NCBI GenBank assembly: GCA_020184695.1
Contig: JAANOX010000111.1
Coordinates: 124,001-188,000 of the forward strand
Direction: 5' to 3'
Source of the DNA: Histomonas meleagridis 2922-C6/04-290x
Lineage: Eukaryota; Protista; Parabasalia
Length of the DNA: 64,000 nucleotides
This document shows positions 13,016 to 56,775 of this stretch, one piece after another. Made by a program: the position numbers and the translations under genes. The stretch's first letter is position 1, and every line of letters starts with the position of its first letter. The notes under the pieces were generated by a model, which saw only the letters and a list, made by a program, of their open reading frames with translations, had not been told where the DNA came from and did not search any database.

Positions 13016-14743
13016 ATGGTTTTGTTGGTCCCATTGCTTATTTTGGGAATAGAATTAAACTATAATAATACAACTCAGGAAATGTTATCAATAACAAACG
13101 ATGAAGAAAATATTACAGTTAATAAGGAAAATTCAACAGATACAAATTTTTATGAAAATAGCCAAAACTTAAATAATAATAGCACATTTACAGAAAATAC
13201 TTTAAACGATACAGATAATTTATTAAATTCATCAGAAGAAAATTCTGATTTAGCAAATAGAACAATTTTGCAGCAAGATGAAAATATAACAATTATCAAC
13301 GAAACGTCTTCATTCAGTGAAATCACAGTAAGTTCAAGTTCGTTAAATGAAACACAAACACAAAACATACATATTGAAAATGATAATCAAACACAAACAG
13401 AGAGTACAAAAGAGGCTGTCGAATCAATAAACGAACAAAATCACACAGATTTACAAGAGAATGAAACACTAAATGAACAACAAACTACTGAAAACATAAC
13501 CATCATTGACAATTACACACAAAATACAGAAGCAGAAAACATTACCCAAATCAATGAACATTCTGATGTTAACGTTACACAAATAGAGAGCATAGAAAGC
13601 AATCAAACAGAACATAATGACACTTCAGTAATGACTGAACAAAACAATACAACTTTAAATATAGAAAACCAAACAATAATTAATGCAAACACAACTTTGG
13701 ACGAACAGAATGAAACACTCACTGACATCAATGGAAATGCAACACAAAACACAGAAAATGAAACAATCATTGATTTAAATGTCAATGCAACTTCGCTACA
13801 AGCAATCGCTGATGCACACAATTACACAGAAAGCGAAACAGTTAAATCAAATAATGAAACAAATTTAGTTACAAAAAGCGAAACAACCACAACACAAAGC
13901 GCAGAAAACGAAACCATAGACATCCAAAGCAATACTACTGTTAGCGCAGCAGAAAGTATAACAACGTCCAACGCTTCTGACGCATCTTCAGAACCAATAA
14001 ATATTCAAACTCCAGACAACAACAAAGAGCACACAATAACAATTAAATCACATAACACGCCACGAGAAAACAGGCGCATTGCACCAAACATTACGCGCAA
14101 ACAATGTCCACCGCATATGGAACTTGACACTAACAACAAATGCAAATGTGTTTCTGATTATCTTTATGATGGCAACATATGTTTTAAGTGCGCGCCGCCA
14201 TGTCATCCGCGTGCGACATGCGTATCACCAGGTAAATGTGTCTGCAAAGAAGGCTATGCAGGCGACGGCATCAGAAGCTGCAGCTCTACAACGCCAAAGA
14301 TATCGAAGATATCGCCTAATTCAGCATCAGCAAATGGTGGCACTATAATAAATATTGTACTCGATGATGAAATACCTATGGAAGTGCATGCTGCATATTG
14401 TCGATTCGGCGCTACAATTGTTAGCGCATTTTCCGTTGGAGGAAAAGAAGCGAAATGCAGAGCGCCAACACACATTCCAGAAAAAGTTATATTTGCATTT
14501 TCATATGATCACGTAAAATGGTCAAAAGATGAAATAGAATTCACATTCATCGAAAAGAATTCTTCGTTTGAATTTCCTTTCGATCGAAAATTTGTTTTTG
14601 TTATTGTCGTTTGTGTTATTTTGGGTGTTATATATATTTTGTTCTTAAGGAAAAAAGATAAAAACGATGATTTATTACCACTGTTACAAAATAATGATGA
14701 AATGGTTCCATTCATACAAAAGAAAAGAGAACATCTCGATTAG
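13016..14743 (+). CDS. Type I surface glycoprotein: signal peptide, N/T/E-rich mucin-like stalk, EGF-like, IPT/TIG, TM
   Basis: Hydrophobic N-terminus, many NxT/S sequons, CHPRATCVSPGKCVCKEGYAGDG EGF motif, ISKISPNSASANGGTIINI IPT motif, C-terminal TM. Confidence 0.85.
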   Translation: MVLLVPLLILGIELNYNNTTQEMLSITNDEENITVNKENSTDTNFYENSQNLNNNSTFTENTLNDTDNLLNSSEENSDLANRTILQQDENITIINETSSFSEITVSSSSLNETQTQNIHIENDNQTQTESTKEAVESINEQNHTDLQENETLNEQQTTENITIIDNYTQNTEAENITQINEHSDVNVTQIESIESNQTEHNDTSVMTEQNNTTLNIENQTIINANTTLDEQNETLTDINGNATQNTENETIIDLNVNATSLQAIADAHNYTESETVKSNNETNLVTKSETTTTQSAENETIDIQSNTTVSAAESITTSNASDASSEPINIQTPDNNKEHTITIKSHNTPRENRRIAPNITRKQCPPHMELDTNNKCKCVSDYLYDGNICFKCAPPCHPRATCVSPGKCVCKEGYAGDGIRSCSSTTPKISKISPNSASANGGTIINIVLDDEIPMEVHAAYCRFGATIVSAFSVGGKEAKCRAPTHIPEKVIFAFSYDHVKWSKDEIEFTFIEKNSSFEFPFDRKFVFVIVVCVILGVIYILFLRKKDKNDDLLPLLQNNDEMVPFIQKKREHLD

Positions 14744-16145: not shown

Positions 16146-16379
16146 ACATTTTAGTGGGAAATTACCAAAAACATCAAAAATAATTTTGAATTCTATGAAT
16201 TAATTTTTAGTTTCTTTTAAATTTCGAAGTTTCAAATAAACTTTGTAAATGAGGCCACTAATAATTTTATACATATGATTATTTTGTATCTGTATTTTAA
16301 TAACAAATCATTAGTTTAGGTTTCATGTTAAATGTTTGTTACTCTCGTTATATCAAATTTTTAACATCTTTAGTGGAGT

Positions 16380-19300
16380 TTGCTTTCAACAAATTTTATA
16401 TAAAACGAATAAACATCTTTAACAATAATATCAATTCCTTTTTGCTCAAGAAGTAAATTAACAATTTCTGTATGGCCATTTTGAGATGCACAAATAAGTG
16501 CTGTTTCAAACAATTTGAAAAAAATTCAAATTTTATATTGAAATATTAAATTATTAAAATAAATTATACCCTTAGCATTAATATCAATTTCTTTTTGCTC
16601 AAGAAGTAATTTAACAATTTCTGTATGGCCATTTTGAGATGCTAAAATTAGTGCTGTTTCAAATAATTTAAATAATTTCCAAATATTATATCAAAACATT
16701 AAATTGATTAATGAAATATTAAATGCAGTAAATAAATATCTTTAGCGTTGATATCAATGCCTTTTTGTTCTAGAAGTAATTTAACAATTTCAGTATAACC
16801 ATTTTTAGATGCTAAAATTAGTGCTGTTTCATATAATTTAAATAATTTCCATATATTATTTTGAAATAAAAAGTTATTAAAGAAAACTATAATTAAAACA
16901 AAAAAGCATTCTGTGAAATAGTATCAATTCCTTTAAAGTTAAGAAGTAGTTTAACAATTTCAATATGATTATAAGACGATGCGAAAATAAGTGCTGTATA
17001 TAATAGTTTAAATAATTTCCATATATTATATTGAATTATCAAATTATCAAAATAAGTTCTAAATAATCTAGATAAATATCTTTAGTATTAATATCAATTC
17101 CTTCTTGTTCAAGAAGAAATTTCACTATTCTTATGTGATTTTTTTTAGATGCTAAAATAAGTGGTGTACAAAATACTTTGAATCATTTCCAAATATTATT
17201 TTACAATTTCGAATTATTAGGATAAATTTCAAACAAAACAAATAAATATTTTTAGCGTTAACATCAATTCCTTTTTGGACAATAAGTAATTTTGCTATAT
17301 CTATTTCATCATAAAATGATGCTATATAAAGAGCTTCTTCAAATATGCAAATTTTCTACAAATTATATTGAAACTCCATATAAAAAAAATAATTTTTTTT
17401 AACATTTAATTGATGTCCTTCATACATAAGGAATAATTTTATTATTTCGACATTATTTAAAAAATACTTCAAAGCATACTGAAAAGCTGTTAAAAATATA
17501 TTTAATTAACTCCAAATATTATTTTGGATTACAAAATTTTACTAAAAAATAATATCTTTAGCATTAATATCAATTCCTTTTTGTTCAAGAAGTAATTTAA
17601 CTATTTCTTTATGACCATTTAAAGATGCAAGCATAAGTGCTGTTTGAAATAATTTAAATAATTTCCAAATATTATTTCTAAATATAAAATTATAAAAATA
17701 AATTACAAGTAAAACAAACAAATATCTTTAGCATTAATATCTATATCTTTTTGTGAAAGAAGTAATTTCACTAATTGAATAATGCCTCTTTTTGATGCAA
17801 ATATTAACATTATATTAATTATTTATAATAAATTTTAAATGTTACTTTGAAATATTAAATCAATGAAATAAACTAAATAAAATAAAATGTAATATTTCTA
17901 CAATATACATCATCAATATTTTCTCCAAAAAGAAATTTTACTGTATCCTTGTAATCATTACCAACAAGAGAAATTTTAAAAATAATAAATAATTATAAAT
18001 AATTATTTTGAATCATTATATTATTGATATAAATATCAATTAAAAGGGTAAAACAATTTCATCATTCCTAAAATAAATTAATTGTTTTTCAAGAAGTAAT
18101 TTAACTATTTCAGTGTAACCTCTTTCAAATGCTGTCCAAATTGCTATTCCAAATAAAATAAATGAATAATAAATATTATTTTGAAATCCAAAATTATTAG
18201 AAAAAATATCAAATAAAACATATTAATGGCTTCAGCATTTTCATCTATTCCTCCTTTTTCAAGAAGTAATTTTACTATTTCAATATGACCATTTTTAGTT
18301 GCAATTATAAGCGCTGTATCAAATAATAAGAATAATTTTCAAATATTTTATCAAAATATTAAATTATTTAATTGGATTTCATATGAAAAATTTGAATATC
18401 TCGGGCATTAACATTAATTCCTTTTTGTTCTAAAAGTAATTTTACTATATCTGTGTAACCATTTTTCGTTGCAAATATAAGAGGTAAATTAAAAATATTA
18501 AAGAATTTCCAAATACTCTATTTAAATATTAAATTAATGAAGCAAGTTTCATAAAATATTAAAAAATATCTACAGCATTTATGTCAATGTATTTTATTTC
18601 AAGAATTATTTTAAATATATCAACAATTCCTTTGTTATATCCATAATCAAGTTCTGTAATAAATAAATTAAACAATTTTCAAATATTTTTTTTAAACCCA
18701 AAAATATTAAAATAAAGATTAAGTTAAATATATAAATCTTTTTGTTATTGATTTTATTTTTTTTGAATTCTAGTATCATTTTTGCTATTTCCATTTGATT
18801 ATTTTCATATGCATTAATCAGTGGTGTCCAAAATAATTTAGATAATTTCCAAAAATACTTTCAAAACATCAAATTCTTCAAACAAAATTTATACAATTAA
18901 TATTTACTGTTTTATAATTTGTATCAATATCTTTGTGTTCAAGAAGTAATTTGACGATTTCAGTGCTACTATTGATAGATGCTAAAATAAGTGATGTATA
19001 AAATATTTTGTTTTAATACCAAAAGCAAATTTCAATCACGCGAATCGTGTATATTAATATCAGTTCTTTTATAATTAAGAAGTAATTTAACTATTTTAAC
19101 ATTATTCTTTTTAACTGCAATCATCAATGCTGTATAAAACATACCATAAAAATTCCTAATATTATCATCAAATTTTAAAATTTTTAATTAAAAATTATGA
19201 TCAAAAAAGGAAAATTTGTAGCATTTACATTGATTCGTTTTTGTCTAAGAAGCAATTTAACAATTTCATTATACCTATTTTGTGATGCATCCATAAGAGC

Positions 19301-19720
19301 TGTCCAAAATAATTTGAATAAATTCCAAATGTTATCAATAATTACCAAATACCACAATTTTAACATTAAGTTTAAAAAAGAAAAATTTGCAGCATTCATA
19401 TTGGTTCTTTTTTGTCGAAGAAGTAATTTCACAATTTCAATGTGATTATTTTTAGCTGCCATTAAAAATGCAGTATAAAATAAATTAAATAAATTCCAAA
19501 TAAATATTTAAAATTTTATAAGATAAAAACAAATTTTCTTATTTACAATGAAATATTTTTATGATTTATTTTTATATCTTTTTGTTCAAGAAGTATTTTA
19601 ACTATATCAATATGACCTTCACTACATGCAACAATTAATGGTGTATAAAATTATTTATTTAAAATTTATTTTACATCAGAAAACACCAAATCAATGAAAT
19701 ATTTTTTGAAAAATATTATT
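16380..19720 (-). other. Array 1: 20 ankyrin modules interleaved with non-coding ~68-nt spacers (continuation of the 19719-20885 gene)
   Basis: Manual reverse-complement translation gives 20 stop-free modules of the type xTALILASxNGxTEIVKLLLEQKGIDINAKDI. Period is 170 nt in 14 of 20 intervals; spacers carry stop codons and shift the frame. Confidence 0.9.
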
Positions 19721-20885
19721 AATCATATTTAATGTTTATATCAATTTCATTTGTCTCAAGTAGTAATTTAACAATTTCAATATTACCTGATCTTGCTGCT
19801 GATATTAAAATCTCTTTTGGCATTTGATTTCCTAATGAAAAATGTTTGAAAAGAAATAAATTACCATTTTCTACTGCTTCGATAATCAATTCTTTAATAT
19901 TTAAACATTTTCCTTCTAAAAAAGTTAAAACTTCAAAATTATTATATAAAATACATTTCTTTCCTAATTCAGTTAAATTTACATCTTTGGTATTCATGTT
20001 ATTAAAAAAATAATAAAAAATTTCATTTCTATGAAATTCAATTGCTATTTCTATTGCATCATTAAAGTTTGAATGATTTTGTTCACAATAATGAACAATT
20101 TCAAGATTTCCACCAGCAACAGCATAAATTCCTGTGTTTTTTAAATCAACATTATTTAATATTAAAAATTTAAAACATTTTATTGATCCAAAGAATGCGG
20201 CATAATCAACAAGTGAAACTTTTTCTTTATTAATGAAAGAATATCTTTCATATAGCGATGGTTCTATAAACTGATTAAAATCAAAGTTTTGTTGTGATGA
20301 AATTTCTTGAAGTTTTTCAATATCATCATTTCGAATCGCTTTAACAATATTTGACGGATTATATCCTTCTTGTATAAATTGCTTATGAAGTTTCCATTTA
20401 TCTTTTTTTAGTTCTTCAATATTTTCATAAAATTGTTGATAAAATGGAATGGTACTCTTTATATCTTCGAACGAATTTATTTCTGCTTTTGTTTTGTAAT
20501 GAATGAAATATAAAGTTTTAATATCCTTTAATATGTTAGGATTAATTAAATTATGTTCAATAAGCTTTCCTAGAAGATAATTAGATTCTTGAGTATTTAA
20601 ATGAATTAATAATTTAGCAAAGATATCAATAATGGAATATTTTGTTGATAATGTTTTAAGAAATTTCAAATATATATCAAAATTCTTCATATTATAAATA
20701 AAAGATGAATATATCATTCGACTTAAAATTAAAATGGAAGAATACGGATATTTAGAATCAATTATTTTTTTTGTTAATTCAATTGATTCAGAAATATTTT
20801 TTTCATTTACATTAGAAATGGTATATTGTATATTTTTTAGATATCGAATATATTTAGTTTCCCTTGTTCCATTTGATCCTTTCAT
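19719..20885 (-). CDS. DUF3447-like/ankyrin-repeat protein, first continuous coding segment
   Basis: AIRNDDIEKLQEIS, IEPSLYERYSF, SLVDYAAFFGSIKCFKFL, AVAGGNLEIVHYC, AIEFHRNEIF. The stop falls inside the first spacer. Confidence 0.85.
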   Translation of the reverse strand: MKGSNGTRETKYIRYLKNIQYTISNVNEKNISESIELTKKIIDSKYPYSSILILSRMIYSSFIYNMKNFDIYLKFLKTLSTKYSIIDIFAKLLIHLNTQESNYLLGKLIEHNLINPNILKDIKTLYFIHYKTKAEINSFEDIKSTIPFYQQFYENIEELKKDKWKLHKQFIQEGYNPSNIVKAIRNDDIEKLQEISSQQNFDFNQFIEPSLYERYSFINKEKVSLVDYAAFFGSIKCFKFLILNNVDLKNTGIYAVAGGNLEIVHYCEQNHSNFNDAIEIAIEFHRNEIFYYFFNNMNTKDVNLTELGKKCILYNNFEVLTFLEGKCLNIKELIIEAVENGNLFLFKHFSLGNQMPKEILISAARSGNIEIVKLLLETNEIDINIKYD

Positions 20886-21305
20886 TAAGCCAAGTCAATA
20901 GAGAATCTTCAAACCAAACAATTTTGGGGTAAAAACCGTCATTTTTGAGAGCAAAATTTCGCCTTTCAAAAGTCTGATATGAAATGAAATAGTGTGTAAA
21001 AAAATGCTTATCAACAATAATATGCAATTTGCATTGGAAATTGATTTAAATGCAATTTTTTTGTATAATATTGAAAGTTATTTTAATGTGTTTGTTTATT
21101 CTGAATACTAAAAAATTGTATTCAAATATTAATTTCAATAAATAATGAGTTTTTTCTCAAATTTAATAACAAAATCTGCAAGTTTAAAAGAAACACAATA
21201 TAAATCAAATATTTTCGATTATAAGCGGAAAAGCAGTATCAAAATATGTTTCCAAAAATTTATTTATGATAAATTAATAGTAACGTTTGAAAAAGTAAAT
21301 GAAGA

Positions 21306-21377
21306 GCTTCACTAGTCTAACGGTTAGAACAGTAGCTTTACACGCTATTGATCCAGGTTCGACTCCTGGGTGAAGCA
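21306..21377 (+). tRNA. tRNA-Val(TAC)
   Basis: Acceptor stem GCTTCAC/GTGAAGC, anticodon arm GTAGC-TTTACAC-GCTAT, T-loop GGTTCGACTCC, downstream T-run. Confidence 0.95.
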
Positions 21378-21560
21378 AAATTTTTTTTTGTTTATTTTTT
21401 CATCACATGTTTGTTAGATAATTTCATGTTAAATTAACCATTTTCTTAGCAAATTAAGCTTAAAGATCATTTAAACATTTCTTTATTTTTTGATAAAAAC
21501 AACAAACAACTCAATAACTTGAAAGAGAATGAAATTTTTCACATAACATTTCTCAAGCAA

Positions 21561-56272: not shown

Positions 56273-56585
56273 TTTACAAAAAAATTGTAGACTTGGATTT
56301 TTAAACGGTCGCACATTTTCTCATTTCGAAAACTTTAGTTCTTTGATATACCAGATAAATTTGAGGTTCATTAACAAAGCGATATTAAATTTCTAATGGC
56401 TAAGTGGTTTGTTCACTGTTTCAATGTTAAAAAAATAAGTAAATCAAATTAATGATACAAAATCCAAGCAAGAAATCAAAAAAAAAGTATAATTAAAGAA
56501 GAACCAAGTATCTTTGAGTATTATATTTACATTCATATATCAAATATTACAAAAAAAAATAGTTAAAAAGCTATAAAAAAATTCT

Positions 56586-56657
56586 TTCCGATACGGGGAG
56601 TCGAACCCCGCTCCCGTGGATGAAAACCACATATCCTAACCGATGAACGATATCGGA
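56586..56657 (-). tRNA. tRNA-Glu(TTC)
   Basis: Acceptor stem TCCGATA/TATCGGA, anticodon arm TGTGG-TTTTCAT-CCACG, T-loop GGTTCGACTCC. Confidence 0.95.
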
Positions 56658-56775
56658 AGACATTTATCATTTTAGAATTTAATATATAATTATATTTCAT
56701 CAATGAAATTGTTTTTAGAAAATCCAATTGTTGAAAAATAATAATATTGAAACAAAAGGTTTTTTTATTTTGGCT

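What the first reader, a model, noticed from the sequence alone, without database searches (positions are those of the whole stretch)
16380..20885. Candidate new system: an ankyrin gene whose every repeat is split by a non-GT-AG, stop-containing ~68-nt spacer
Seen: the DUF3447-like ORF stops just after its last ankyrin repeat. Twenty more modules follow, each open from the Thr-equivalent codon to the KDI-equivalent, although they are strongly diverged and usually in a different frame from their neighbour. Spacers contain TAA, TAG and TGA, including spacers whose length preserves frame. They have no consistent GT, no AG and no parabasalid ACTAAC branch point. Removing 68 nt from a 170-nt period leaves 102 nt, a 34-aa ankyrin repeat (e.g. 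..INAKDI-LF-ETALILAS..), and would give a ~1,070-aa protein. Inference: stop-free divergent modules beside stop-rich, length-fixed spacers indicate purifying selection on translation. The spacers would then need to be removed or skipped. Options are non-canonical introns, ribosomal bypassing (as in T4 gene 60 or Magnusiomyces mitochondrial byps), or DNA-level excision (IES-like). Novelty not verified.
Basis: partly seen in the sequence, partly recalled or inferred. Interest (0 to 1): 0.95.

Follow-up and report, generated by a model that had tools for sequence, protein, structure and literature searches.

The report
Ankyrin gene split by 17-nt inserts
An unannotated gene of the poultry parasite Histomonas meleagridis encodes a ~1,070-residue ankyrin-repeat protein only if 75 tiny T-rich inserts of exactly 17 bases, mostly separated by single codons and lacking normal intron signals, are removed; that would be an intron-like element unlike any I found described.

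Summary
On the minus strand, a 388-aa DUF3447/ankyrin ORF (19719-20885) is followed by 20 diverged ankyrin modules. These have 0 stops in 625 in-frame codons, where neutral decay predicts 14-19, and only 3n indels.

The "68-nt spacer" is not one block. Each 80-nt gap is four units of a 17-nt T-rich insert (consensus ATTT-N9-ATTT) followed by one codon. Keeping those codons restores the canonical ankyrin hairpin KD-x-x-G-x-T. The third codon is Gly in 18 of 21 gaps. The other three are hydrophilic and are the most variable sites of the unit. Gap lengths are quantised (12, 46, 63, 80 = 12+17n), also in relatives from metagenomes.

Removing 75 inserts gives one ORF of 1,068-1,079 aa. There is no GT-AG, no ACTAAC and no conserved RNA structure. 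The region is unannotated in GCA_020186115.1.

I could not lay reads because the single call was lost to a filter. RNA-run word shares (best 0.52 and 0.40) fit the removal model (0.56 and 0.34), but they are not decisive.

The scan found the same 17-nt grammar before on other DNA of this genome (s1-298693, s1-298680, s1-298667, s1-298676), with claimed RNA support. That note gave me the lead; the tests here are my own.

The parts
19722..20885 (-). First long exon: ATG at 20885, N-terminal domain with DUF3447, and first ankyrin repeats (M0 = 19722-19811). The apparent stop TAATAA (19721-19716) lies in the first insert.
19555..19721 (-). Unit 1: 77-nt gap (19645-19721) plus module M1 (19555-19644). 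Inserts 19721-19705, 19704-19688 (adjacent, or one 34-nt piece), 19684-19668, 19664-19648. Kept codons G, K, Y.
   Evidence: this parse is less certain than those of the 80-nt gaps
19385..19554 (-). Unit 2: 80-nt gap plus M2. Inserts 19554-19538, 19534-19518, 19514-19498, 19494-19478. Kept codons K, K, G, Y.
19214..19384 (-). Unit 3: 81-nt gap, in frame and open, plus M3. Inserts 19384-19368, 19364-19347 (18 nt), 19343-19327, 19323-19307. Kept codons N, G, G, W.
19044..19213 (-). Unit 4: 80-nt gap plus M4. Regular parse gives inserts 19213-19197, 19193-19177, 19173-19157, 19153-19137. Kept codons N, K, G, Y. An alternative parse with equal score shifts the first insert by 3 nt.
18908..19043 (-). 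Unit 5: 46-nt gap plus M5. Only two inserts: 19037-19021 and 19017-19001. Kept codons S, R, G, Y.
18738..18907 (-). Unit 6: 80-nt gap plus M6. Inserts 18907-18891, 18887-18871, 18867-18851, 18847-18831. Kept codons K, D, G, W.
18568..18737 (-). Unit 7: 80-nt gap plus M7. Inserts 18737-18721, 18717-18701, 18697-18681, 18677-18661. Kept codons N, W, E, I.
18398..18567 (-). Unit 8: 80-nt gap plus M8. Inserts 18567-18551, 18547-18531, 18527-18511, 18507-18491. Kept codons E, N, G, N.
18228..18397 (-). Unit 9: 80-nt gap plus M9. Inserts 18397-18381, 18377-18361, 18357-18341, 18337-18321. Kept codons E, N, E, D.
18058..18227 (-). Unit 10: 92-nt gap plus short M10. Inserts 18227-18211, 18207-18191, 18187-18171, 18167-18151. 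GGA is then contiguous with the module (G-I-A-I-W...).
17894..18057 (-). Unit 11: 83-nt gap plus degenerate M11 (81 nt). Inserts 18054-18038, 18034-18018, 18014-17998, 17994-17978. Kept codons I, D, N, Y, K.
   Evidence: irregular, parse uncertain
17724..17893 (-). Unit 12: 80-nt gap plus M12. Inserts 17893-17877, 17873-17857, 17853-17837, 17833-17817. Kept codons L, N, K, N.
17554..17723 (-). Unit 13: 80-nt gap plus M13. Inserts 17723-17707, 17703-17687, 17683-17667, 17663-17647. Kept codons V, Y, G, Q.
17395..17553 (-). Unit 14: 63-nt gap plus M14 (96 nt). Three inserts: 17550-17534, 17530-17514, 17510-17494. Kept codons I, C, G, L; the first insert position is empty.
17248..17394 (-). Unit 15: 57-nt gap plus M15. 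Inserts 17394-17378, 17374-17358, 17357-17341. Kept codons G, E.
   Evidence: irregular, parse uncertain
17078..17247 (-). Unit 16: 80-nt gap plus M16. Inserts 17247-17231, 17227-17211, 17207-17191, 17187-17171. Kept codons E, E, G, C.
16908..17077 (-). Unit 17: 80-nt gap plus M17. Inserts 17077-17061, 17057-17041, 17037-17021, 17017-17001. Kept codons R, D, G, Y.
16738..16907 (-). Unit 18: 80-nt gap plus M18. Inserts 16907-16891, 16887-16871, 16867-16851, 16847-16831. Kept codons I, F, G, E.
16568..16737 (-). Unit 19: 80-nt gap plus M19. Inserts 16737-16721, 16717-16701, 16697-16681, 16677-16661. Kept codons N, N, G, E.
16415..16567 (-). Unit 20: 63-nt gap plus M20. Three inserts: 16564-16548, 16544-16528, 16524-16508. 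Kept codons I, N, E, E.
16370..16414 (-). C-terminal tail and stop. Depending on whether 0, 1 or 2 further 17-nt pieces (16414-16398, 16394-16378) are removed, the ORF ends after 1,079, 1,068 or 1,075 aa.
   Evidence: not resolved
49661..52037 (-). Second, paralogous locus with the same grammar: 307-aa DUF3447-type ORF 51114-52037, then modules separated by 80-nt gaps parsed as Q-N-G-Y, R-D-G-W, G-Y-G-N and K-S-G-M, and one 78-nt gap.

Best explanation
The region 16370-20885 (minus strand) is one intact, unannotated Histomonas meleagridis gene. It encodes a ~1,070-aa protein with an N-terminal DUF3447-type domain and 21 ankyrin repeats.

Structure of the gene:
- The coding sequence is interrupted 75 times by T-rich inserts of exactly 17 nt (one is 18 nt).
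- All inserts are in phase 0. The consensus is A/G-T-T-T, nine variable bases, then A-T-T-T.
- They sit in clusters of up to four in the part of each repeat that encodes the beta-hairpin tip.
- Each of the four linker codons (x-x-G-x) is therefore isolated as a 3-nt island, or attached to the next 90-nt module.

What must happen:
- The inserts have to be taken out for the protein to be made.
- The most likely route is excision from the RNA by an intron-like process that recognises the short U-rich ends and measures 17 nt.
- This process is either a highly unusual mode of the spliceosome or a separate cut-and-join activity.

Shown here: the grammar, the selection on modules and on the single codons, the length quantisation, and its presence in relatives.

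Inferred: that removal happens at the RNA level, and by which machinery.
For: Selection on the modules:
- 0 stops in 625 codons against 14-19 expected under neutral decay, and only 3n indels in modules.

The 17+3 grammar, from 21 gaps of exactly 80 nt (16 in the window, 5 in relatives):
- The 3-nt islands have G 32% and T 21%; the 17-nt pieces have G 5% and T 57% (chi-square 196, p about 3e-42).
- The third island is Gly in 18 of 21 (GGA 15, GGC, GGG, GGT).
- Hydrophilic residues make up 0.83 of triplets in the model register, against 0.38 or less in all 17 other registers.
- Uninterrupted homologues mostly have a 4-residue linker, with Gly at position 3 in 50 of 91 and D/N/K/E at positions 1-2.

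Length quantisation:
- Gap lengths are 12+17n: n=0 in L004, and 46, 63 and 80 nt here.
- Other family contigs show 43, 63 and 66 nt = 3m+17n.
- Distant relatives in JGI metagenome contigs have junction gaps of 6/9/12/18/39 nt or 26/29/43 nt = 9 or 12 plus 17k.

Variability:
- Islands c1, c2 and c4 are the most variable sites of the unit (0.51-0.64 differences per site). c3 is 0.24, inserts are 0.26-0.41 and module third positions are 0.40. This matches the known variable binding positions of ankyrin repeats.

Product:
- Removing 75 inserts gives one ORF of 1,068-1,079 aa.

RNA word shares:
- Runs labelled RNA hold at most 0.52 of the words of 16300-20950 (model maximum 0.56).
- They hold 0.40, 0.29, 0.26 and 0.17 of the words of 18318-18907 (model 0.34).
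- DNA runs hold 0.92-0.97.
Against: - The only read-laying run failed on a filter.
- The word shares could also come from patchy coverage. Low-depth DNA runs give 0.36-0.60, and run X5 held 0.46 of the whole stretch but under 0.05 of the 590-nt test region.
- The ends (AT/AA/GT ... TT) fit no known splice-site rule.
- Exons of 3 nt between 17-nt introns have no precedent I could find for a spliceosome.
- Parses of the five irregular gaps (77, 81, 83, 92, 57 nt) were chosen to avoid stops, so they are not independent tests.
Confidence: 0.75

Rival explanations
1. One non-canonical intron of about 68 nt per repeat. It keeps ATT on the left and TTATTTGAA on the right, giving KDI-LFE-TAL.
For: The arithmetic works: 170-68=102 nt. 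An uninterrupted junction in a relative reads KN-VMFE-SAL. The word-share prediction of 0.39 is as close to the observed 0.40 as the 17-nt model's 0.34.
Against: - It does not explain the 17-nt steps in gap length (80, 63, 46; also 26, 29, 43).
- It does not explain the G-rich, hydrophilic, hypervariable 3-nt islands at columns 17-19, 37-39 and 57-59.
- It does not explain the Gly codon with four synonymous forms.
- It puts Phe where homologues have Gly.
Confidence: 0.05
2. A dead or decaying tandem amplification. Only the 388-aa ORF is functional, and the array is an untranslated 3' region or junk.
For: The region is unannotated. dN/dS between modules is high (median 0.73). The ORF has its own stop codon.
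Against: - 0 stops against 14-19 expected, and indels in modules are only 3n.
- Codon position 2 is more conserved than positions 1 and 3.
- Insert length is conserved at exactly 17 nt across paralogues and across relatives whose N-terminal domains are about 50% identical.
- The third island stays a Gly codon with four synonymous forms, although changes at its first two positions are as frequent as third-position changes.
Confidence: 0.06
3. Translational bypassing. Ribosomes hop over each 17-nt piece, as in T4 gene 60 or the byps of Magnusiomyces mitochondria.
For: The pieces are short, in phase 0, and often contain stops.
Against: - There is no match between the codon before an insert (GAT, AAT, GGA and others) and the last triplet of the insert (mostly TTT), which bypassing requires.
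- There is no conserved hairpin.
- 75 consecutive hops would leave almost no full-length product.
- RNA word shares are far below the DNA shares.
Confidence: 0.03
4. DNA-level excision (IES-like), so that an expressed copy without inserts exists in some nuclei or as an extrachromosomal molecule.
For: The ends are short direct repeats (ATTT...ATTT), and paralogous repeats show precise presence or absence of single inserts.
Against: DNA runs hold 0.93-0.97 of the words of an insert-rich stretch. No germline/soma split is known in parabasalids (general knowledge). I could not test for joined forms in DNA.
Confidence: 0.03

Closest known systems
Ultra-short fixed-length spliceosomal introns: Mikrocytos mackini 16-17 nt, Stentor coeruleus 15-16 nt, Bigelowiella nucleomorph 18 nt or more (PMC10245619, PMC9505925, PMC12316389)
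   Same: Extremely short, with a very narrow length distribution (17 nt here), A/T-rich, and many per genome.
   Different: As far as I recall, those introns have GT-AG ends and a branch A; the passages I read describe them only as spliceosomal, with conserved sequences (PMC10245619). They are flanked by ordinary exons. Here the ends are mostly AT/AA/GT...TT, there is no AG, and the inserts stand in series separated by single codons.
Trichomonas vaginalis / Giardia type introns: extended 5' splice site, fused branch point and 3' site ACTAACACACAG; type B about 23-25 nt (PMC12316389, PMC6679479)
   Same: Same phylum. Short and T-rich. A few T. vaginalis intron-containing genes encode ankyrin proteins.
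   Different: No ACTAAC/CTAAC, no ACACAG-type 3' end and no obligatory GT. The inserts are 6 nt shorter than the shortest known trichomonad intron. There are 75 in one gene, whereas the H. meleagridis paper reports at most one intron per gene (PMC8529796).
Euglenid nonconventional introns (from general knowledge, not checked in the library)
   Same: No GT-AG rule.
   Different: Those have variable length, and their ends pair to form a stem. Here the length is fixed and no conserved pairing was found.
Translational bypass elements (T4 gene 60, Magnusiomyces byps; general knowledge)
   Same: Short, non-coding, stop-containing inserts within a reading frame.
   Different: No matched take-off and landing codons and no hairpin. 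The RNA word shares suggest the inserts are missing from RNA contigs.
3-nt microexons of animals and plants (general knowledge)
   Same: A single codon as an exon.
   Different: Those are rare, isolated and flanked by long canonical introns. Here there are up to three in a row between 17-nt inserts, about 55 in one gene.

Membership tests
Ankyrin-repeat / DUF3447 protein family of parabasalids | DUF3447 domain followed by ankyrin repeats | tested here: met
   Pfam PF11929 (E 1.2e-8) and Ank_2 (E 2.9e-10) hit the 388-aa ORF. Homologues occur in Histomonas, Tritrichomonas foetus and T. musculus. The 20 modules match the ankyrin pattern.
Parabasalid/diplomonad spliceosomal introns | GT at the 5' end with an extended 5' splice-site motif | tested here: not met
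   The first two bases of the 75 inserts are AT 35, AA 15, GT 11, TT 5, other 9.
Parabasalid/diplomonad spliceosomal introns | Fused branch point and 3' site (A)CTAAC...ACAG, ending in AG | tested here: not met
   No ACTAAC or CTAAC in 16300-19900. Last two bases are TT 57, AT 12, AG 1. No CTAACACACAG within 1 mismatch in the window.
Ultra-short spliceosomal introns (Stentor, Mikrocytos) | Narrow length class near the lower limit (15-17 nt) | tested here: met
   74 inserts of 17 nt and one of 18 nt. Gap lengths are 12+17n.
Ultra-short spliceosomal introns (Stentor, Mikrocytos) | GT-AG termini and removal by the spliceosome | tested here: not met
   Termini as above. Spliceosome dependence cannot be tested with these tools.
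Any intron | Absent from mature RNA while present in DNA | tested here: inconclusive
   Only word shares are available: RNA runs at most 0.40-0.52, DNA 0.92-0.97, model 0.34-0.56. Read laying failed.
U12-type AT-AC introns | 5' ATATCCTT and a 3' AC | tested here: not met
   Insert logo is ATTT...ATTT, and no insert ends in AC.
Structure-defined introns (archaeal/tRNA bulge-helix-bulge, IRE1-type, euglenid nonconventional) | Conserved pairing that brings the two cut sites together | tested here: not met
   RNAalifold on 21 aligned gaps with flanks gave no consensus pairs. Mean MFE z-score was +0.3 against shuffles.
Translational bypass elements | Matching take-off and landing triplets, usually with a stem-loop at take-off | tested here: not met
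   Codons before inserts (GAT, AAT, AAA, GGA...) differ from the insert's last triplet (mostly TTT). No hairpin.
Ciliate-type internal eliminated sequences | Insert-free form in somatic DNA | tested here: inconclusive
   Bulk DNA runs keep the inserts (0.93-0.97 of words). Rare joined DNA forms could not be looked for.

The most novel reading that the evidence does not exclude
Histomonas and related parabasalids possess a non-spliceosomal RNA excision-ligation system that works as a ruler. It removes exactly 17 nt bounded by AUUU...AUUU-like ends and can join exons as small as one codon. In ankyrin genes it isolates each hypervariable target-binding codon of every repeat as its own micro-exon, possibly allowing combinatorial or regulated variation of binding surfaces.
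Probability: 0.3. Interest if true: 0.97.

Novelty: categorically new. Interest (0 to 1): 0.88.

Why it matters
If the 17-nt pieces are cut from RNA, several things follow.

- **A new kind of intervening sequence.** It has a fixed length, no GT-AG ends, and stands in series between single-codon exons. It occurs in a lineage thought to be almost intron-free, with strictly canonical, motif-rich introns.
- **Limits of splicing.** It would reset ideas on the minimum size of introns and exons. It makes the question of how cut sites are recognised directly testable.
- **Annotation.** Current annotation of H. meleagridis misses a family of large ankyrin proteins. This 4.5-kb gene is entirely unannotated, and paralogues are annotated as truncated proteins. 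The same probably holds for relatives.
- **Ankyrin biology.** The inserts flank exactly the hypervariable binding positions of the ankyrin fold. This suggests a link between gene structure and diversification of binding surfaces.

Tried and rejected
- **Exact look-up.** Looking up the 388-aa product found nothing on record. The Logan contigs of this species do not appear to be in the gene-position collection, because AP-mu was found only in the NCBI assemblies. No RNA contigs could therefore be fetched.
- **Protein searches.** Searches for a long spliced product found only paralogues and relatives read from DNA, each truncated in or reading through the gaps.
- **GT-AG parsing.** By eye, some gaps have no AG or no usable GT, so GT-AG was rejected.
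- **A longer exon.** Reading the conserved NIWKLFKLF stretch as coding was rejected. It has stops in three modules and in L004. It resolves into insert 3 end + GGA + insert 4.
- **Stop counts per register.** These alone do not single out the model register, since registers 0, 5 and 14 also have no stops. Composition, hydrophilicity and Gly do.
- **RNA structure.** No conserved structure.
- **Bypass codon matching.** Rejected.
- **Isolated inserts elsewhere.** A scan of the window for single 17-nt inserts joining long ORFs in other genes found none outside the two ankyrin loci.
- **Canonical motif and Rfam.** No trichomonad 3' motif in the window. Rfam found only two tRNAs.
- **dN/dS.** The value between modules (median 0.73) is not informative, because repeats diversify.

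Full report
**Where the window comes from**

The AP-mu gene next to the finding is identical to a gene on contig WSYJ01000182.1 of Histomonas meleagridis GCA_020186115.1. That record has no called gene between window positions 16146 and 21560. The whole finding is therefore unannotated. The published genome paper reports a 43-Mb genome with 28% GC, where only about 5% of genes have an intron and none has more than one (PMC8529796).

**The observation**

- On the minus strand, ORF 19719-20885 (388 aa) carries DUF3447 and ankyrin Pfam hits. It stops at TAA TAA right after an ankyrin repeat.
- Twenty further ankyrin modules follow down to 16415. Seventeen are exactly 90 nt from the Thr-equivalent to the Asp-equivalent codon. 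The other three differ by -12, -9 and +6 nt.
- In the ankyrin frame there are no stops in 625 codons, against 56 and 107 in the other frames.
- The modules differ from their consensus at a mean of 18.5 of 90 positions. Neutral mutation to that degree gives 14-19 stops and never gave zero in 4,000 simulations.
- The gaps are 80 nt in 12 of 20 cases. Sixteen of the 20 shift the frame.
- The gaps are rich in stops and very T-rich: 51% T and 4% C on the sense strand.
- ACTAAC and CTAAC are absent, and several gaps have no AG at all.

**What the spacer really is**

I took this as a lead and tested it here.

- Every 80-nt gap divides without remainder into four units of 17+3 nt.
- The 48 pieces from the twelve 80-nt gaps at this locus give the logo A(77%)/G-T-T-T ... 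A-T-T-T.
- In 21 gaps of exactly 80 nt (16 from two loci of the window, 5 from relatives), the 3-nt islands differ sharply from the 17-nt pieces. G is 32% against 5%, and T is 21% against 57% (chi-square 196).
- The third island is a Gly codon in 18 of 21, with all four synonymous forms.
- 18 of the 28 GG dinucleotides in these gaps sit at column 57, and most of the rest lie in or next to the other islands.
- Hydrophilic residues make up 0.83 of the in-register triplets, against at most 0.38 in every other register.
- This explains the conserved TTTGGAAAT motif: it is the end of insert 3, then GGA, then the start of insert 4.

**Check against uninterrupted homologues**

Among 185 proteins collected in the searches, the commonest linker between modules is 4 residues (91 cases). 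Gly is at position 3 in 50 of them, and D/K/N/E dominate positions 1-2. The 17+3 parse reproduces this pattern: N-N-G-E, K-D-G-W, R-D-G-Y and so on.

**Length quantisation**

- At this locus the gaps are 80 (12 times), 63 (twice) and 46 nt, which is 12+17n.
- The rest are 77, 83, 92 and 57 nt, which fit 3m+17n, and 81 nt, which has one 18-nt piece.
- In shorter gaps, a whole 17-nt piece is missing and its neighbouring codons are directly joined. An example is gap 17491-17553: ATT, insert, TGT, insert, GGA, insert, TTA.
- A relative has a junction with n=0: KN-VMFE-SAL, 12 nt.
- Other family contigs from ENA gut metagenomes show 43, 63 and 66 nt with the same parse. Some have the 63-nt in-frame form, which gene callers read through as ...VYFNNLIFQNNIWNFFKLF....
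- In more distant relatives from JGI metagenome contigs (23-38% identity, GC 0.32-0.34), junction gaps are either 6, 9, 12, 18 or 39 nt, or else 26, 29 or 43 nt = 9 or 12 plus 17k. No other frame-shifting length occurs.
- The extra 17 nt in those contigs are T-rich, often start with GT, and sit between linker codons. An example is R-[GTATTATTACTTATTAT]-G-Q-TPLH.

Seventeen is thus a conserved quantum well beyond this gene.

**Variability**

Over all 120 pairs of 170-nt units in the window, per-site differences are as follows:

| Site class | Differences per site |
|---|---|
| Island c1 | 0.51 |
| Island c2 | 0.55 |
| Island c3 (Gly) | 0.24 |
| Island c4 | 0.64 |
| Inserts | 0.26-0.41 |
| Module third positions | 0.40 |
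| Module positions 1+2 | 0.32 |

- In pairs with similar modules the contrast is larger: c1 0.61 and c4 0.69, against insert 4 at 0.10.
- The three hypervariable islands correspond to the hairpin-tip positions that vary in ankyrin binders. That correspondence is general knowledge, which I did not check here.
- Hypervariability confined to 3-nt islands between better-conserved T-rich pieces is hard to explain unless the islands are codons.

**Product**

Removing 75 pieces (74 of 17 nt and one of 18 nt) gives a single ORF from the ATG at 20885. It is 1,068-1,079 aa long, depending on how the tail after M20 is processed. Parses of the five irregular gaps were chosen to avoid stops and are provisional.

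**Is the removal at the RNA level?**

I could not lay reads. The indirect evidence is as follows.

- Runs labelled RNA (study P2) hold at most 0.52 of the sampled 31-mers of 16300-20950. DNA runs hold 0.91-0.92. The removal model allows at most 0.56.
- For 18318-18907 (four gaps and three modules), RNA runs hold 0.40, 0.29, 0.26 and 0.17, and DNA runs hold 0.97 and 0.93. The model gives 0.34, and the sampling SD on 58 words is about 0.06.
- This shows the array is represented in RNA contigs and is compatible with insert removal.
- However, low-depth DNA runs also give 0.36-0.60, and run X5 dropped out of the second query. Patchy coverage is therefore not excluded.
- Four earlier follow-ups of this scan report read-level removal of 17-nt pieces at other loci. 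I did not check them.

**Mechanism**

- The pieces have none of the signals of trichomonad introns: extended GT 5' site, fused ACTAAC...ACAG 3' site, and a shortest known length of 23 nt (PMC12316389, PMC6679479).
- They have no U12 signals and no conserved secondary structure.
- Bypassing lacks matched take-off and landing triplets.
- What is conserved is the length, the U-rich ends and phase 0.
- I therefore favour RNA excision by a length-measuring process. I put roughly even odds on an aberrant spliceosomal mode versus a separate endonuclease-ligase.
- The four 20-nt units resemble each other. The series may have grown by 20-nt tandem duplication and then by duplication of whole 170-nt units. 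This is inference only.

**Comparison with the literature**

The nearest known things are the 16-17-nt introns of Mikrocytos and the 15-16-nt introns of Stentor (PMC10245619). Those are spliceosomal; from memory they have GT-AG ends. Full-text searches for 17-nt introns, Histomonas introns, non-canonical introns in parabasalids, and Histomonas ankyrin found no description of this arrangement.

**Verdict**

It is wrong in anatomy: there are four 17-nt inserts plus single codons, not one 68-nt spacer.
- This locus is another, large (75 inserts) instance of the phenomenon the scan already noted elsewhere in this genome.
- New here is evidence that the 17-nt quantum extends to distant relatives, and that the isolated codons are the hypervariable ones.

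Noticed in passing
window 49661-52037 (-): Second paralogous gene with the same grammar. One 78-nt gap (50573-50650) lacks the GG of the Gly codon, so two inserts fuse into a 35-nt piece and the gap reads through in frame. The last detectable module (49661-49750) has an in-frame stop, and 49751-50142 has no recognisable module.
   Followed up: partly
L032:6474-6684 and L033:6438-7169 (Tritrichomonas foetus GCA_001839685.2): - T. foetus homologues also continue past annotated ends.
- TRFO_39332 is followed after 46 nt by another ankyrin ORF, with a 31-nt frame-shifting gap between modules.
- P0055 has two 81-nt gaps, one with an in-frame TAG followed by an intact module.
- These lengths do not fit a simple 12+17n.
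   Followed up: partly
L008, L015, L024, L027, L028, L031 (JGI metagenome contigs Ga0209639_*, Ga0074193_*): Distant DUF3447/ankyrin relatives have single or double 17-nt T-rich inserts, often starting with GT, between linker codons. Open stretches on either side are only 33-106 codons, so these genes seem to be interrupted often as well. The source organisms are not identified.
   Followed up: partly
L034-L036 (ENA gut metagenome contigs): These relatives have 63-nt gaps (three inserts) that are in frame and stop-free. Gene callers therefore produce proteins with a spurious 19-residue hydrophobic stretch (VYFNNLIFQNNIWNFFKLF) in every repeat. One insert is 19 nt because of a longer A run.
   Followed up: partly
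window 16146-21560: No gene is called here in GCA_020186115.1, although it holds a 388-aa ORF with clear Pfam domains. The paralogue P0020 is annotated as a 532-aa 'caskin' protein that ends inside a gap.
   Followed up: yes
window 21306-21377 (+) and 56585-56658 (-): tRNA-Val(TAC) lies about 420 nt upstream of the ankyrin gene's ATG, on the opposite strand. A tRNA-Glu(TTC) lies further on.
   Followed up: no
window 13016-14743 (+): A 575-aa protein with a long N/T/E-rich region full of N-x-T/S sites, a weak EGF-like Cys-rich part and a C-terminal hydrophobic segment. It is probably a surface glycoprotein.
   Followed up: no
window 17972-18009: read laying refuses this low-complexity stretch (AATTATAAAT repeats) and counts the call. 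Future sessions should lay reads on either side of it.
   Followed up: no
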